A stretch of 64,000 nucleotides of DNA from Guillardia theta CCMP2712 (lineage: Eukaryota; Protista; Cryptophyta). The notes below the pieces were generated by a model. It ran no database searches, had not been told where the DNA came from, and saw nothing but the letters and a program-made list of their open reading frames with translations. The stretch lies in assembly GCF_000315625.1 (NCBI RefSeq), contig NW_005434667.1, positions 467,160-531,159 of the forward strand. Reading direction: 5' to 3'. The translations under genes and the position numbers were made by a program. Shown piece by piece: positions 38,991 through 45,500 of the stretch (positions are counted from its first letter, which is position 1; each line of letters starts with the position of its first letter).

Positions 38991-40873
38991 TGTTCGCTTC
39001 CTCACGCCTGTACCCTCACCCCCGTCTATACCAAGTTGTGAGTGGGTAGGGCAATGAAAACACCGGTGTATTTTATGCAGAAGGGGTTCGAGTCAATTTG
39101 GAGGGGTGGGGGTCATCAATATATCTATCTACACCCCTTTCGTTCTTGTAGCAAAGGCCCCAACAACAAAAATATCAGGGGTACATTGAGAAATGGGTGG
39201 GTAGCGTTAACAAAGGACGCTTCTTATGTTGTGGGGGTGGTTAATTTCCACGCACGAGGCCGAGTAGACGGGGTGGGGTGAAAATGTGATTTGTATGACC
39301 CTACCCCTGATTTGACACTATCTATCGACGTAAAAGTAGGGGTGCAACAGAGAACCCCCGATGGACTACCCGGTTGTTTGGATTCCAACTACGGAGGCCG
39401 GTAATACAAAATTTGAACCTTGCCACGAAAAATGGATCTAATTTTCGAAATATAAGACTATATTTGAAATTATATCTCAAATTTGAAATTCCCCCCCCCC
39501 CCCCCCGTTGATTCCCGTTACAGAAGTCCAGCAAAGCATTCACTTTAAAAAGTAGTCTTTTTAAGATTACAATAATTATTTCAAAAGACCCACTAAAATA
39601 TAGCTGTACAAGTAATGCAGTGATATTTCCTTCAAAGCTACAATAAATTAGTTTTAACAAATATATATTAACAACAACCAAGTACATTCAATTTATTTAC
39701 AGTACAAATAGTTTGATGAATCTGTACCAAGAATCTCTAGTATCTTTTTTAAAAACTCTTTGCCTCTAAGATCATCTTGACCACCTCCCCATTCATGCCC
39801 TCTCAAGGTCCCCTGACCCCACCCTTCTGTTCACCCCACCCTACCCTCTAATTGTCTCATTTTTGTCTAATAGCAGCCATACACCCCACCCACCCTTTCC
39901 CAAAAGTCTCTACCCCCTCCTCACTTTTACCACCCTTTTCATCTCCACCCGTCCTTTCCTCTGTCAAACAACCCACCCTCTTGTTCCCTGGCAATGTGTA
40001 CAGCACCCCCTTTCCCGGGCATCGGAACGGGTGGTTTCACTACCCACCTTTGAATGGACCCAGTGTTGATGTACCCAACCCGTCGCAGACTTCCATGACC
40101 CCTTCATATCAGACCCTACCCCTTCATACCTCGAATGATGACCCTTAATGTACATCTTTCACCCCCTCGTTTCTATCTTTTTAGCCTGTTACAAGTACCC
40201 ATCTTTTCATGATACCCCCCCATGCAGAGCACCTTCAAGGTCCCTACCCTCTGTGGAAATACTCCTACCCCCCTGGATTCAACCCCCACCCCCTCTCGGA
40301 ACATATCGAGACCTTCCTGTTCTCGCTCCATGCAGCTAGTGGAGGCGACAGCAACGAGCAAGAGTCGTGCTGTCCCTCGATTTGAGCTCCTCCCCTCCTT
40401 CGGACCTCAGCCTTCAAAACTTCCTCTCTCACTCGTCTCTTCCCTCCCATCCTTCTCTTCCCTATACCTAGATCTGCAAAGTATCCCTTTCTTGAAAAGC
40501 TTTCCCCTACACCTTGCTTCCCCTTCTTTGGCTAACTTGCATTGCTCTGAGAGACCCTTCGCTTGCTGGTTTTCTCACTTCTCTTGTTGGATTTCGTCTC
40601 GATCTCTCCAGCTCATGTTGCCCTTGCCTCTTGTCTTTCTTGTCTCTCGGAACCCTGGCTAATGTACCTTTTTTTTTACTGCAATTATGATGAACGCGTC
40701 TTTCGAGTCGGATATATCTTTTCTGATTTGAATCAAAGCAACATCGTCTGAATTTTTTTAAAAAACGAATGGATCTGGAAGTTTCATTTCTTGGCTCGTG
40801 GACCATGTTTTGCAGACGATATTTAGGTGAACAGAAACGATTGGCATAGTGCAATAGTTGAACAAATTCAACG

Positions 40874-42310
40874 ATGATGACATTGGGCACAAACAGCATC
40901 ACACGAGCACTCCGTTGGTGGTTTTACCATCATGGATTGTTCTGTGCCAAACACCCACGTCTTGCCGCTGTCCTCGGAATGATAGTCATGCTTGTTAGCG
41001 CATTAGGGTTCTTCAATCCTCGAGGGCAGCCTTTCGTCTTTGACTTTCCGGGAATCATGCAAGACTTTGTGAAGTTTGTACGACAATACGCAGTCCCGCG
41101 CTGGCTCCTTGGAGCCTACATGCTTCTTGCGACGTACCTGGCATGGGCAGCAGACGTGGGTGTGAAATACTCCACGTTGAAGAGAGTGAAATCAGCGCTG
41201 GGGCTCAACACAACGTCTCACAGGTGCGTGAGAGGAAGGAAAATCCCATGGAATCCTTCGTTCCGTGCTCGTTTCACAGTGGGGATATGCGGAGTGCTGA
41301 CGGTCTTCTCCTCCATTCTGCTTGCTGGAGCTGTCTCGAACTCTCTCCTCGGGGTGAACATGGGTATGATCCTGGATGAGTTGCCGTTCCTTGTCGTCTT
41401 CATGGGGGTTCAGGGAGTCTTCAGCCTCCTCGATGCATCTACGAGCACCTACAACGAGTCTGAGCTGAGGAGAGGGCAAGTCTATGTGGTAGACAGAGTC
41501 AACCAGATCGCGCTGGCGACGTCCCTCACGGGTCCAGAGGAACTGGTGATGTCGCTGAGCAAGGCGCTGGTCGCTCTGTTCGTCGTCTGGCCCCTCTCGA
41601 CGCTCATGGGGCAGCAATGCATCGCCGACTTCTCTGTGCATGCCGGGCTCGCGGTGCTCTTCAAGTGTCTTCTTCAGATGTCAGTGTTCGCCTCGGTCGT
41701 GCAGGCCTTGCTCCCTGAGTGGGACCCCGCGAGGAAGCAGAACCGTCCCTTGCTCACGCCGGAGATGAAGTGCCGGGTCTGCTTTGAGTTCTCTCAAGAC
41801 CTGCGGAGGTGTCCCTGCAGGTGCACGGGGAGCGTCGGGTACATCCATCCAGTCTGCTTCCAGCAGTGGTTCGAGACCAAGAAGAGCATGCGCTGTGAGC
41901 TCTGCCACGTGATCTTCAACGTCCGCATGCTGCCAACGTCTGTGATGACCAACATCCAAACCATGGAGTCCCTCGTCGCGGAGCTGCTTCCTCCGCTCTC
42001 GAAGAGGCTCGCCCTCTACCTCCTCCTCTCCATCCCCATCAGCTGCAACAAGCTCGGCTTCATGGTTGTCGACGCTGTCTCGGAGAACTTCCGCCTGCTC
42101 GTTGGCACTGCTCACAGCAATGCGGCATACATGCTGACTCTGATCGCCTGCTCCCTCCCCGCCGTCGCCGTCGCCCTCCTGGAAGTTGTACCGCGCGTTC
42201 TGACCGACTGGCATCGTCGCCATCGTGTGATGCACTGGGATGGGCCGATAGACGGGATGTCAGACTCGGATTCAGATGATGAATACTGCAACCAAGAAGC
42301 GAGGAGATAG
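40874..42310 (+). CDS. Sterol-sensing domain (SCAP/HMGCR/NPC1 type) + RING-CH (MARCH-type) membrane E3 ligase, intronless
   Basis: FYHHGLFCAKHP. SSD helices GICGVLTVFSSILLA, DELPFLVVFMGVQGVFSL and IADFSVHAGLAVLFKCLLQMSVF. C4HC3 ring CRVC..CPCRCTGSVGYIHPVCFQQW..CELC followed by two TM helices. Confidence 0.88.
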   Translation: MMTLGTNSITRALRWWFYHHGLFCAKHPRLAAVLGMIVMLVSALGFFNPRGQPFVFDFPGIMQDFVKFVRQYAVPRWLLGAYMLLATYLAWAADVGVKYSTLKRVKSALGLNTTSHRCVRGRKIPWNPSFRARFTVGICGVLTVFSSILLAGAVSNSLLGVNMGMILDELPFLVVFMGVQGVFSLLDASTSTYNESELRRGQVYVVDRVNQIALATSLTGPEELVMSLSKALVALFVVWPLSTLMGQQCIADFSVHAGLAVLFKCLLQMSVFASVVQALLPEWDPARKQNRPLLTPEMKCRVCFEFSQDLRRCPCRCTGSVGYIHPVCFQQWFETKKSMRCELCHVIFNVRMLPTSVMTNIQTMESLVAELLPPLSKRLALYLLLSIPISCNKLGFMVVDAVSENFRLLVGTAHSNAAYMLTLIACSLPAVAVALLEVVPRVLTDWHRRHRVMHWDGPIDGMSDSDSDDEYCNQEARR

Positions 42311-42583
42311 GAGGAGGCGGAGCTGGAGCGAGGCAGCGGGTAGGAGGAGCGGGAAAGGGGATTCGTCTGCCCCTTGCGCCGAGGAAGGGCTGCCGAGGAA
42401 GTGCTTCAGCTCGTTAGATTTCTTTCAATTGGCTGAAACGGAGGGAGCAGGGAGCGACGTCGGCCTCATGGCAAAGTTGCAGACATGTTAAGATAGATAC
42501 AACAACAACGTGACAGCATGTAAACATGATACATTCATTGACGTGTAATATACAAGGATTGTCACTCTTGCTCGTTGCCTTTC

Positions 42584-45500
42584 TCACGCTGCCAGGTCGA
42601 TAAGAGCTGAGCGAGTCATCATATGTTTGACCAACATCTGAAAAGGCGTCATCGAGCTCCGGTATCCTCCCCTCCCCTATCCTCCCCAGCTCTTCCTGCA
42701 TTCTCCTCCTCTTCCTCTCACCTGTGGAAGAAGTGGCGAATCAGCGCTCATGTTGACCAGCCTCCCCGCCTCCTTCACTCCGCAGCTCCATCCTCTCTCC
42801 TGCCATCAGGTGAGGCGGCGGCAGCAGGAGAGCTGTCCTCACCTTGCTGTCCCACTGCAGGCCCTCCGCCCGACACCGATCCTTGATGTCGTAGGAGTTG
42901 CGAATCAAGATTCTTGACTTCCCCTCCCCGCCCTCCTCCTCGAGGATGATGGCGTACGGAAGCTTGTTTGTCTTGCTCTTGGAGGAGGAGACTGCCTTGT
43001 GAGAAGAGCCGGCGATGGCCTCGAGGACCAAGTCTGCTGTCACCTCCTCCTCCCTCGACATGTTCAGTATCGCAGCAGCATGCGAGCGAGTGCAGGTCCA
43101 CGCCTGCGCCGTCTCGTTCCAGGCCATCCCGAGCTCGCGAAGGAAGCGCTTGAGCCCGTAGCAGCGATCCACAAGCACCTGCGGTGTGAGGCGATCAATG
43201 GCGGCGAGACGGGAGGGTGAGGAGGAGAAGGAGGACCGTGCTGTTCTCGATGCGACATCGGGGCATGCTGATTGGTTGAGGAGAGTCTGAACGCGAGGAG
43301 ACGGAGGATACTGTGGAAGAGTAAGTTGGTAGCAAAGTTTGAGGAGGATGATAGAGGCTTTTGTCAGCATCACTCACAGTCTTTGGGGAGGGACATGCGC
43401 TCGAGGCCCTCGAGCAGCTCCTCGAGCGAGAGATTCTCCAGCAGCTCCTCCTCTTTCGTCTTCGTCTCCTCCTCGCTGTTGCTCGAGCACTTGGAGTCCT
43501 CTCCCGCCATGCCCCCATGGGCCATCGCACCCGCCTCCTCTGCCCCCCTCATTCTTCTCCTCATCTCCTCCATCGGCAGCGCCCAGGCCTTCTCCTCCTG
43601 CCGCCATCGGAACCCTGCCATCCGGAGCCGCTCCTTCATGTTGTATCCGTTGAACACCAGCAGCTCGTCCCCGCACACCCGAACGTCAACTTTCCTCCCC
43701 TTCCTCTCATCCTTCACTCCGCTCAACTTGCCGGAGCGTTCCGCTGCCTTCCTGGCTCGCGCGAGCATGGACAGAACCTTGTGCTCAGTGATGGAGGAGG
43801 AGGAGGCGCAGGGATCTTCTGTGAGAGCTCCGCTGACGAAATCTGTGCATATGAGCTTCTTGATCTGTTCAAAAAGTTAGCTCTTCCTCCCTCCCTCCTC
43901 TTCCCTCCTCCTCATCGCCCCTCCTCCTGGTCACAAGTTCATCTCACCTCGGTGGAGTTTGCCTTCAGCACGATGTCTCCCTCCTCTGCTCTGCTCGTGT
44001 TGACCAGGTTGACCAGCTCCAGGGCTGGAGCAAGCGAGGGCGCGAATCTCATGTGGATCATCCCCTCCTCCTCCTCCTCCTCTGTCTTGAGAATGCTACA
44101 GAGAGACCTTAAACCCTGTCTCCCCCCTTCGTTCCCTTCCCTCTCCTGCTGGTGCTGGTGCTCATCCTTCTCTTCCTTCTTGTCCGTCTCGCATCCTTCG
44201 GTGTACTCGTACAACATGTCGAGAATCAGCTCGGCGTTGAGATCAACGAGCGAGTCGATGCCAACCTGCCAAGACGCCAGAGTGAAACTCTGCTATCCCC
44301 TTCTTCCGCTCCCCTCCTCTCCTTTGTTCCTCTCCCTTCCCCCCGCATATCCCTTCCCCACTTCCTTTCTCCACTCCGCCCTTCTCCCACAGCTTGATGT
44401 TTGTTCTCACAGCGAGCAAGCCCTCTATCCCATCCCAACAGTCTTCAGTCGACTACGTTGGTTCGTCCCTCTCCTCATCCTTACCATCCTCTCGAACTCT
44501 TTGACTTCTTTTTTCCACAATCCGGAAGTCTCGTCGAGCTCGAAGAAACAGGATCGCAAACTCTCTTCAAACGTCTCTGCGTTGCTGATCTGAACATCCC
44601 GATGATCCACCTGACAACTCGATCAACCTCCTCCTCCTCCTCCTCCTCCTCCTCCTCTCACCTTCCAGCGAGGAGAAGGTATGGAAGCGATCAGAGTTCG
44701 GGCATGCTGGAATTTCGTCTTTGAAGAGATCAGACCCAGCACAGACAAGTTGCAAACTTGTTTCCTCGCTCCCCCCGCCCTCTCACTCCTCTCCTCCTCC
44801 TCACCGTCTCTTCCTCTCCCTCCACTTCTTCGCCTTTGACTTCTCGTCTCCAGACGTTCTCCTCCACATTCAAGACGAAACCTGCGAGCTTGAGGCGGAA
44901 CTTGTCGCCTGCAGGACCACGAGGTGAGGAGGAGAGGAGGAGGAGGAGGAGAGGAGGAGGGGAGGTGAGGAGGAAGGGAGGAGGAGGAAGGGAGGAGGAG
45001 GAAGGGAGGAGGAGGAGTGGTACCTCGAGCGAACTTGTCAAGGGGCCGGACGAGCACTATGTCGTTCTCCTCCTCGTGAAATTCCATGCGGCGATCTGGT
45101 GCTGGATGAGAAAAGGAACGGGAAGAGTAGGAGGAGGAGTTGTGGGGATGGCACTTCACCTAGTGGAGGGAGAACCTCCTTCGCATTATCTTGGTACATC
45201 TGCATCATCGTGAACAAGAACAAGAACAAGAACAAGAACAAGAACAAGAACAAGAGCAAGAGCAAGAGCAAGAGCAAGAGCAAGTTCTTTCTTCTCTCAA
45301 GCTCATTCCTCTCACCTTGACGAAGAGGATCTCAAGCATTTCTTGGACCTTCTCTCTTGTCACGTCCTTCTCACTCGCATTGAAGAATTCCGCGATTCTC
45401 GACAGCTCGGCTGTCCATCCCCTACTTGCCACGTCGTAGGAGAAACCTGCCGAGGATAAACAAAAGCAAAATCAGAGGGTGGAAAAAGATGTGAATGGAA

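What the first reader, a model, noticed from the sequence alone, without database searches (positions are those of the whole stretch)
40874..42310. Sterol-sensing domain fused to a MARCH-type RING-CH ligase: candidate one-protein sterol-regulated ERAD switch
Seen: one uninterrupted 478-aa ORF with the N-terminal helix typical of SCAP/HMG-CoA reductase (FYHHGLFCAKHP), a five-helix SSD, then a C4HC3 RING-CH and two TM helices. Established: animals keep these parts separate (SCAP/HMGCR/NPC1 carry the SSD; MARCH6/Doa10 is the RING-CH ligase that degrades sterol-synthesis enzymes), and the known SSD-like ligases TRC8/RNF145 use a RING-H2. Inference: this alga may couple sterol sensing directly to ubiquitination. 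I know of no described protein with this architecture. The lack of introns in an intron-dense window suggests retroposition or a recent fusion.
Basis: partly seen in the sequence, partly recalled or inferred. Interest (0 to 1): 0.9.

Follow-up and report, generated by a model that had tools for sequence, protein, structure and literature searches.

The report
Sterol-sensing domain fused to RING-CH ligase
A cryptophyte alga expresses one intron-free gene whose protein joins a SCAP/HMG-CoA-reductase-type sterol-sensing membrane domain to a MARCH-type ubiquitin-ligase finger; the searches found this combination only in cryptophytes and in no paper, and it could link membrane-lipid sensing directly to protein degradation.

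Summary
Window 40874-42310 (+) is one 478-aa ORF. Pfam finds a sterol-sensing domain (PF12349, 48.8 bits) and a RING-CH finger (PF12906, 41.7 bits), both above the curated cut-offs. An AlphaFold model (pLDDT 73.7) superposes residues 7-286 on SCAP TM1-TM6 (Z 21.9, rmsd 2.6 A over 212 residues).

The topology puts a complete C4HC3 finger in the cytosol, followed by two more TM helices. Transcriptome contigs from three studies and a poly(A) end show one unspliced mRNA (about 40321-42564).

The gene is single-copy. It is the only locus of the 87-Mb genome with both domains, and the only SSD there that lacks the transporter-type GxxDD/GVDN motif.

Relatives (46-68% identity) all carry both domains. 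The named ones are all cryptophytes (Hanusia, Teleaulax, Cryptomonas). An exhaustive scan of 1.84 billion representatives, the ESM Atlas and the literature gave no other SSD+RING-CH protein.

The intron-free fused state is shared by diverged lineages, so "recent fusion" is not supported.

Function is inferred: a membrane E3 ligase gated by sterol or a related lipid, possibly through an INSIG-like partner whose gene is probably present. No sterol response has been tested. I class it as a new variant of a known kind (compare RNF145/TRC8).

The parts
40321..42566 (+). Unspliced polyadenylated mRNA
   Evidence: Transcriptome contigs of three studies are colinear with the genome, with no gap or joint: X3 40321-42535, X1 40331-42566, X5 40652-42561. 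Raw RNA reads (X19) pile up on the + strand at 42118-42570, with an A17 loose end after 42564.
40321..40873 (+). 5' leader of about 550 nt with seven upstream ATGs (uORFs of 13-110 codons)
   Evidence: Contig starts; uATG count by script. A regulatory role is not tested.
40874..42310 (+). CDS, 478 aa plus stop
   Evidence: The start at M1/M2 is supported by conservation of residues 4-35 in relatives and by the 479-aa Hanusia phi transcript protein P0024. The public model P0001 starts at M36 and truncates TM1.
40874..41014 (+). Cytosolic N-terminal helix and TM1 (residues 1-47), SCAP/HMGCR-like
   Evidence: Model helices 6-26 and 28-47. Model 7-286 superposes on SCAP 5-450. 15 of 27 and 9 of 20 positions are invariant.
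41099..41710 (+). Sterol-sensing domain, five TM helices (residues 76-279). Pfam's match covers residues 131-276 (41264-41701).
   Evidence: Pfam; PDB sequence matches; structure matches Z 20-22 to SCAP, NPC1, NCR1 and PTCH1. The first SSD helix aligns with that of the genome's transporter-type SSDs. The TM4 motif reads GVQG (H in some relatives) instead of GVDD/GADD/GVDN.
41771..41905 (+). RING-CH (C4HC3) zinc finger, residues 300-344, predicted cytosolic
   Evidence: Pfam RINGv; 2d8s, 1vyx and Doa10 2m6m; ligand spacing. 45 of 56 positions in 297-352 are invariant, the most conserved segment. Six TMs and an N-in start place it in the cytosol. The loop 96-129 has 8 K+R and no D+E.
42005..42205 (+). 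TM7 and TM8 (residues 378-444), the two-TM hairpin that follows RING-CH in small MARCH-type ligases
   Evidence: Hydropathy; model helices 361-390 and 415-449. Remote RINGv proteins align through this part, e.g. P0063 6-144 to query 300-446.
42206..42247 (+). Conserved basic juxtamembrane motif D-W-H-R-R-H-R-x-M-H-W-D-G-P (residues 445-458), function unknown
   Evidence: 11 of 14 positions invariant, against 1 of 20 in the tail that follows.
42311..42564 (+). 3' UTR up to the poly(A) site
   Evidence: Poly(A) loose end at 42564 and contig ends at 42535-42566.

Best explanation
This is a real, expressed, single-exon nuclear gene of a cryptophyte, most likely Guillardia theta. It encodes an eight-TM membrane E3 ubiquitin ligase. 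TM1-TM6 form a sensor-type sterol-sensing module like the membrane domains of SCAP and HMG-CoA reductase. That module has a short TM1-TM2 loop, no second RND half and no proton-relay Asp. The cytosolic loop after TM6 carries a complete RING-CH finger, followed by a two-TM hairpin as in small MARCH ligases, and then a conserved basic motif. Shown: the anatomy, the fold on a predicted model, expression, single-copy status, conservation, and restriction to cryptophytes. Inferred: the RING recruits an E2 and ubiquitinates membrane proteins. Also inferred: the SSD couples this to the lipid state of the membrane, either by binding sterol or a pathway intermediate directly, or by sterol-dependent binding of an INSIG-like partner. 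The coupling would change the ligase's access to substrates or its own stability, giving feedback control without a separate adaptor. My odds: true SSD+RING-CH fusion 0.95; active membrane E3 0.8; gated by sterol or a related lipid 0.4-0.5.
For: Both Pfam domains pass the curated cut-offs, and there are independent PDB sequence matches. A model built from family members alone returned SSD/RND proteins in 35 of its 36 top-ranked Foldseek matches, all weak (best E 5e-3). The better model gives SCAP Z 21.9/rmsd 2.6 A/212 of 238 residues, NPC1 Z 22.3, and HMGCR TM-score 0.55 by target. RING ligands and W332 are invariant, and the SSD core and RING are the most conserved segments. One unspliced poly(A) mRNA covers both halves, and a near-identical full-length transcript protein exists in Hanusia phi. 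It is the only locus with both domains among 9 SSD and 10 RINGv loci. It is the only SSD there without GVDD/GADD/GVDN. An INSIG-like gene is probably present. The precedent for sterol-responsive ligases with a putative SSD is RNF145/TRC8 (PMC6292692). MARCH6 is the RING-CH ligase of squalene monooxygenase (PMC7132291).
Against: There is no functional data of any kind. SSDs also occur in proteins that move or bind other lipids, so the ligand is unknown. The Insig-binding YIYF tetrapeptide of SCAP/HMGCR is not recognisable; TM2 reads A-Y-M-L-L, with only the Tyr conserved. The genome's HMG-CoA reductase shows no SSD or membrane domain. No canonical squalene epoxidase and no SCAP_N were found, so the classical substrates and circuit are absent or different. 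The INSIG-like exons are each below Pfam's cut-off. The good model used an alignment that I enriched with SSD and RINGv sequences, which biases it towards those folds. ER localisation is assumed, not shown.
Confidence: 0.5

Rival explanations
1. The SSD is only a membrane scaffold or client-binding platform. The protein would be a constitutive membrane E3 ligase whose six-TM bundle recognises transmembrane substrates or partners, with no response to sterol.
For: The YIYF motif is absent. The SSD fold is shared with many proteins of differing ligands. The classical sterol-circuit partners SCAP and SSD-HMGCR were not found.
Against: The SSD core helices and the 199-220 loop are conserved as strongly as the RING (63-77% of positions invariant). 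That fits a specific ligand or partner site better than a mere anchor. TM7/TM8, which would suffice as an anchor, are far less conserved (27-36%).
Confidence: 0.25
2. It is a post-ER trafficking regulator of the MARCH1/8 type. It would ubiquitinate plasma-membrane or endosomal proteins for down-regulation, with the SSD targeting it to sterol-rich compartments, as in NPC1, Patched and Dispatched.
For: The best RING match is MARCH8/c-MIR (2d8s, 1.2e-7). The RING-TM-TM layout is that of small MARCH ligases. By sequence the SSD scores best with NPC1/NCR1/PTCH1.
Against: By structure the closest compact match is the ER sensor SCAP (rmsd 2.6 A). The layout (TM1, short loop, SSD, two more TMs) is that of the ER proteins HMGCR and SCAP. 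The transporter motif is missing.
Confidence: 0.15
3. It is an assembly or annotation artefact, or a decaying fusion with no function.
For: The public model differs at the N-terminus (443 aa). The G. theta protein lacks the long C-terminal tails of its relatives.
Against: Identical colinear contigs come from three transcriptome studies. The full-length ORF is conserved at 63-68% identity in several lineages, with invariant catalytic ligands.
Confidence: 0.02

Closest known systems
RNF145 and TRC8 (RNF139), animal ER ubiquitin ligases with a putative sterol-sensing region
   Same: Polytopic membrane E3 ligases in which a multi-TM region regarded as sterol-sensing sits N-terminal of a cytosolic RING. 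RNF145 is sterol-responsive and works with Insig on HMGCR (PMC6292692). This is the closest functional analogy.
   Different: From my own knowledge, those carry a RING-H2 finger at the C-terminus of about 14 TMs, and their 'SSD' is weak and belongs to the TRC8_N family. Here the finger is C4HC3 RING-CH. The SSD passes Pfam's SSD model and superposes on SCAP. Two TMs follow the RING. No TRC8-family match appeared in Pfam.
SCAP and HMG-CoA reductase membrane domains (sensor-type SSD proteins)
   Same: TM1 + five-helix SSD + two further TMs with N-in topology. Model residues 7-286 fit SCAP TM1-TM6 at rmsd 2.6 A. HMGCR 8djm gives TM-score 0.55 by target. The short TM1-TM2 loop resembles HMGCR. The RND proton-relay Asp is absent.
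   Different: No WD40 domain, luminal loop 1 or loop 7 of SCAP, and no reductase domain. The output module is a ubiquitin-ligase finger placed in the TM6-TM7 loop. No YIYF motif. Sequence identity is only 16-20%.
MARCH6 / Doa10 (ERAD RING-CH ligase of sterol-pathway enzymes)
   Same: RING-CH finger (Doa10 2m6m at 6e-4). Involvement in sterol-pathway control is known for MARCH6 (PMC7132291).
   Different: Doa10/MARCH6 have an N-terminal RING, 14 TMs and the TD/MARCHF6_C domain, and no SSD. None of these features is present here.
Small MARCH-type ligases (MARCH1/8, viral K3/MIR), RING-CH followed by two TMs
   Same: The C-terminal half (residues 297-450) has this layout. The best RING matches are MARCH8 2d8s and KSHV K3 1vyx.
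   Different: Those have no SSD, and their RING is at the N-terminus of the protein.

Membership tests
Sterol-sensing domain proteins (Pfam PF12349 / SSD fold) | Profile match above the curated threshold | tested here: met
   48.8 bits against a cut-off of 22.3, residues 131-276. All relatives carry the same annotation.
Sterol-sensing domain proteins (Pfam PF12349 / SSD fold) | Five-helix TM bundle superposable on solved SSDs | tested here: met
   On a predicted model (pLDDT 73.7): SCAP 6m49_B Z 21.9, rmsd 2.6 A, 212 aligned; NPC1 Z 22.3; PTCH1 Z 21.5. Caveat: the alignment used for folding held SSD paralogues.
Sensor-type SSD (SCAP/HMGCR) as against RND-type transporters | Single TM1+SSD unit without a second six-TM half and without the TM4 GxxxD/E proton-relay motif | tested here: met
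   Only 8 TMs. TM4 reads GVQG, or GVHS in relatives. The eight other SSD loci with the motif region read (all but the C1 second exon, L006) have GVDD, GADD, GADS or GVDN.
Sensor-type SSD (SCAP/HMGCR) | YIYF tetrapeptide in the first SSD helix, needed for Insig binding (PMC6292692) | tested here: not met
   The first SSD helix reads A-Y-M-L-L (A-Y-L-L-L in relatives). Only a Tyr is conserved, and its equivalence to SCAP Y298 was not established.
SCAP | Luminal loop 1/loop 7 domains and C-terminal WD40 propeller | tested here: not met
   The TM1-TM2 loop has 28 residues. No WD40 or SCAP_N match in the protein or in the genome (that search had no positive control).
HMG-CoA reductase | Catalytic domain PF00368 | tested here: not met
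   Absent from the protein. The genome's only PF00368 locus lies elsewhere (C204).
RING-CH / MARCH (Pfam PF12906) | C4HC3 ligand pattern with C-x-C-x7-H-x2-C core and the conserved Trp | tested here: met
   Residues 300-344 match the pattern. 41.7 bits against a cut-off of 21.6. All ligands and W332 are invariant.
RING-CH / MARCH (Pfam PF12906) | E2-dependent ubiquitin-ligase activity | not testable with these tools
   Needs an in-vitro ubiquitination assay.
TRC8/RNF145 | C-terminal RING-H2 finger and TRC8_N-type membrane region | tested here: not met
   The finger is C4HC3 RING-CH. No TRC8-family hit even at E up to 10.
Doa10/MARCH6 | N-terminal RING-CH, about 14 TMs, TD/MARCHF6_C domain | tested here: not met
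   The RING is internal, there are 8 TMs, and there is no MARCHF6_C match. Atlas clusters with that domain give TM 0.24.

The most novel reading that the evidence does not exclude
Cryptophytes run sterol (or isoprenoid) feedback through a single polypeptide. A bona fide SSD would read the membrane, perhaps together with the genome's INSIG-like protein, and directly switch a built-in RING-CH ligase that destroys pathway enzymes or itself. This would be a natural 'Rosetta-stone' fusion of sensor and effector. It would replace the SCAP/SSD-HMGCR circuits, which appear to be missing in this genome.
Probability: 0.3. Interest if true: 0.8.

Novelty: new variant of a known kind. Interest (0 to 1): 0.6.

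Why it matters
In animals and fungi an SSD turns membrane sterol content into protein degradation through separate proteins: SSD protein, Insig, then ligase. A natural fusion of a clear SSD with a ligase finger is independent evolutionary evidence that SSDs and ubiquitin ligases act as one functional unit. It also offers a compact 478-residue system in which sensor and output sit on one chain, which suits structural and reconstitution work on SSD signalling. It points as well to an unexplored lipid-homeostasis circuit in cryptophytes, whose genome seems to lack SCAP, an SSD-bearing HMG-CoA reductase and canonical squalene epoxidase. The claim of function is still only inference.

Tried and rejected
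- **First AlphaFold job.** It used family members only (A2) and gave a poor model (pLDDT 50.9). Its Foldseek matches were weak (best E 5e-3), although 35 of the 36 top-ranked were SSD/RND proteins. I replaced it with a model from an enriched alignment (A3).
- **Profile evidence for the N-terminal 'FYHHGLFCAKHP' motif.** Pfam on residues 1-130 gave nothing. The resemblance rests only on the structural superposition with SCAP.
- **Parent genes of a recent fusion.** Neither half has a close paralogue. The nearest RINGv locus is C4:1059562 at 34% identity, and the SSD half finds none.
- **The same architecture elsewhere.**
  - phmmer against 1.84 billion representatives.
  - Pfam on ten candidates with a RING at a similar position; none has an SSD.
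  - Word-based searches with the protein, its N-terminal half and the family profile.
  - ESM Atlas by features and by shape.
  - All returned only the cryptophyte family.
- **Literature.** Three searches found no description. A search on Guillardia sterol biosynthesis gave nothing useful.
- **Earlier notes of this scan.** They concern neighbouring genes only and did not bear on this finding.
- **Complex prediction** was not used. The only candidate partner, the INSIG-like gene, is split over exons, and I had no unaltered full-length protein to submit.

Full report
**1. Is it there?**

Yes. The ORF listing gives one open frame at 40874..42310 on the + strand, 478 aa.

Pfam reports two domains above their curated cut-offs:
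- PF12349 Sterol-sensing: E 9e-13, 48.8 bits (cut-off 22.3), residues 131-276.
- PF12906 RINGv: E 1.3e-10, 41.7 bits (cut-off 21.6), residues 300-344.
- PF02460 Patched SSD is a weaker overlapping match.

Sequence matches to solved structures agree. The RING-CH of MARCH8/c-MIR (2d8s) scores 1.2e-7, KSHV K3 3e-5, Doa10 6e-4. The SSD of NPC1 (residues 653-783) scores 2.6e-5, followed by NPC1L1, NCR1 and HMGCR at 0.009.

The zinc-ligand spacing C-x2-C-x11-C-x-C-x7-H-x2-C-x12-C-x2-C lies at residues 300-344.

**2. Anatomy and topology**

Hydropathy and the second AlphaFold model (mean pLDDT 73.7, pTM 0.60) give this order:
- an N-terminal amphipathic helix;
- TM1 (28-47);
- a 28-residue loop;
- the first SSD helix (76-95);
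- a basic loop (96-129; 8 K+R, no D+E);
- SSD helices 130-159, 164-198, 221-244 and 248-279;
- a linker and the RING (297-352);
- TM7 (378-399) and TM8 (415-444);
- a strongly conserved basic motif (445-458);
- an acidic, unconserved tail.

With the N-terminus and the basic loop in the cytosol, the six helices before the RING place the finger in the cytosol, where a ligase finger must be. This is the same topology as SCAP and HMGCR. The layout (TM1, short loop, SSD, two more TMs) resembles the HMGCR membrane domain, with a RING-CH in the TM6-TM7 loop. Read another way, it is an SSD module joined to a small MARCH-type RING-TM-TM module.

**3. Fold**

VIA-align on the second model gives these matches:
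- SCAP (6m49_B): Z 21.9, rmsd 2.6 A over 212 of 238 residues, model 7-286 against SCAP 5-450.
- NPC1 (5u74): Z 22.3.
- NCR1: Z 21.6.
- PTCH1: Z 21.5.

All are far above the level of about 13 that helical bundles reach by chance. Foldseek ranks SCAP first (E 2e-4; TM 0.64 normalised by target), and HMGCR 8djm has TM 0.55 by target.

There is a caveat. I enriched the alignment for this model (A3) with the genome's own SSD segments and with remote RINGv proteins, which pushes the model towards those folds. Its Foldseek matches were weak (best E 5e-3), but 35 of the 36 top-ranked were SSD/RND proteins. The Pfam and PDB sequence matches are independent of either model.

**4. Expression and gene structure**

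Contigs from three separate studies lie colinear on the genome without any gap or joint: 40321-42535, 40331-42566 and 40652-42561. Depth is zero on both flanks.

Contigs of the neighbouring minus-strand gene show four joints of 43-84 nt with CT..AC ends, that is, spliced introns. So these assemblies are RNA, even though the run records only guess so.

Raw RNA reads of a 2026 run pile up on the + strand at 42118-42570 and carry an A17 loose end after 42564 (all). The gene therefore gives one unspliced, polyadenylated mRNA of about 2.25 kb that contains both halves.

The 5' leader (about 550 nt) holds seven upstream ATGs.

The public gene model (P0001, 443 aa) starts at M36 and cuts into TM1. 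Two lines of evidence support the longer start: residues 4-35 are conserved in relatives, and a transcript-derived protein of Hanusia phi is 479 aa and 98% identical.

**5. Organism and distribution**

The genome has 87.1 Mb in 669 contigs, and the protein's 90% cluster contains Hanusia phi.

Relatives have these properties:
- Full-length relatives are 63-68% identical and fragments go down to about 46%; every relative long enough to span both regions carries both domains, while P0014 and the short fragments show only one.
- Named members come from Teleaulax amphioxeia and Cryptomonas paramaecium. The family thus spans at least two cryptophyte orders.
- In two further lineages the gene is an uninterrupted 640-647-aa ORF on 10-21 kb metagenomic contigs whose other gene calls are short fragments, as expected of intron-rich eukaryotic DNA.
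- The SSD core and the RING are the most conserved segments (63-80% of positions invariant among seven full-length sequences). TM7/TM8 are at 27-36% and the tail at 5%.
- Relatives carry 130-250 extra, unconserved C-terminal residues that the window's protein lacks.

**6. Is the architecture found elsewhere?**

phmmer against 1.84 billion representatives gave 16 hits below 1e-30, all from this family. After those come RINGv-only proteins and a few NPC1-like SSD-only proteins.

Ten candidates with a RING at a comparable position have no SSD. Searches with the N-terminal half and with the family profile found nothing new. The ESM Atlas has no cluster combining the two domains.

In the genome itself there are 9 SSD loci and 10 RINGv loci, and only this one has both. 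Neither half has a close paralogue.

Three literature searches found no description. I could not query InterPro architectures, so an unannotated occurrence in a proteome outside these collections is not excluded.

**7. What kind of SSD?**

All eight other SSD loci of the genome whose TM4 region I could read carry the TM4 motif of RND-type transporters (GVDD, GADD, GADS or the NPC1-like GVDN). This protein has GVQG, and relatives have GVHS or GVQS.

Together with the single six-TM unit, this marks it as a sensor-type SSD like SCAP and HMGCR, not a transporter. It is the only such SSD found in the genome.

Against a strict SCAP/HMGCR analogy, the Insig-binding YIYF tetrapeptide (PMC6292692) is not recognisable in the first SSD helix, where only a Tyr is conserved.

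**8. Genomic context of the pathway**

- The only HMG-CoA-reductase locus (C204) begins with a soluble-looking leader and shows no SSD upstream.
- No SCAP_N was found, although that search had no positive control.
- No canonical squalene epoxidase was found.
- One squalene/oxidosqualene-cyclase exon is present.
- Two consecutive minus-strand exons on C27 match the INSIG profile colinearly: positions 32-70 at 17.4 bits and 113-144 at 26.5 bits, the latter with an F-D-R-T-R-T-G motif. Each is below the cut-off of 28 alone. An INSIG-like gene is therefore probable but not proven.

**9. Mechanism**

Shown: a conserved, expressed membrane protein with an intact SSD fold and an intact RING-CH in the cytosol.

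Inferred from established knowledge of RING-CH ligases and of SSD proteins: the finger recruits an E2 and ubiquitinates membrane proteins. The SSD makes this depend on membrane sterol or a pathway intermediate. It could do so directly or through an INSIG-like partner, by changing substrate access or the ligase's own stability. RNF145 behaves this way in animals (PMC6292692).

My odds are 0.95 for the architecture, 0.8 for ligase activity and 0.4-0.5 for sterol or lipid gating.

The rivals are:
- a sterol-blind scaffold or client-binding role for the SSD (0.25);
- a post-ER MARCH1/8-like trafficking role (0.15);
- an artefact (0.02).

**10. Comparison and novelty**

The protein works most like RNF145/TRC8 but is not a member of that family, because the RING type and the membrane region differ. 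It is not SCAP, HMGCR or Doa10/MARCH6 either; each fails a defining feature (see the membership table).

The parts are known, and the idea of a sterol-responsive ligase is known. The direct fusion of a profile-detectable SSD with a RING-CH finger, and its restriction to cryptophytes, appear to be new. I class it as a new variant of a known kind.

The fused, intron-free state is shared by lineages that differ at a third of their residues.

**11. Verdict**

Interest is 0.6. It is a clean and apparently undescribed natural sensor-effector fusion that is directly testable, but it sits in a non-model lineage and has no functional evidence yet.

Noticed in passing
L013:1219-2261 (minus strand) = G000 contig C27, about 650.8-651.9 kb: Probable multi-exon INSIG-like gene. 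Two consecutive exon ORFs match Pfam INSIG colinearly (profile 32-70 at 17.4 bits; 113-144 at 26.5 bits, with an FDRTRTG motif). Each is below the cut-off of 28 alone. The first exon ORF starts with a hydrophobic leader that could be a signal peptide.
   Followed up: partly
L020:7382-8159 (+) = G000 contig C204, about 70.9-71.7 kb: The genome's only HMG-CoA-reductase locus begins with a soluble-looking leader and has no SSD or membrane domain upstream. The gene runs off the contig end.
   Followed up: partly
window 40321-40873 (+): The 5' leader of the SSD-RING mRNA is about 550 nt long and holds seven upstream ATGs (uORFs of 13-110 codons), which may mean translational control.
   Followed up: no
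window 40874-40978 (+): The public gene model (P0001, 443 aa) starts at Met36 and truncates TM1. Conservation in relatives and the Hanusia phi transcript protein support the upstream start.
   Followed up: yes
window 42595-43410 (minus strand): The neighbouring gene shows four very short introns (43, 58, 67 and 84 nt, GT..AG on the minus strand) in transcriptome contigs. This confirms that the window is intron-dense around the intron-less gene.
   Followed up: no
G000 loci L001-L010 (contigs C60, C76, C3, C1, C21, C195, C35, C72): Eight other SSD loci, all of transporter type (GVDD, GADD, GADS or NPC1-like GVDN in TM4). They include three near-paralogues (C76, C3, C21) and a pair (C195, C35), one member of which has an in-frame TGA.
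   Followed up: partly
whole genome G000: No match to canonical squalene epoxidase (PF08491), and only one exon-sized match to squalene/oxidosqualene cyclase (C4:31382-31498). The early sterol pathway may use non-canonical enzymes.
   Followed up: no
P0002-P0007, residues from about 480 to the end: Relatives of the protein carry 130-250 residue C-terminal tails that are unconserved and low in complexity. The window's protein lacks them.
   Followed up: no
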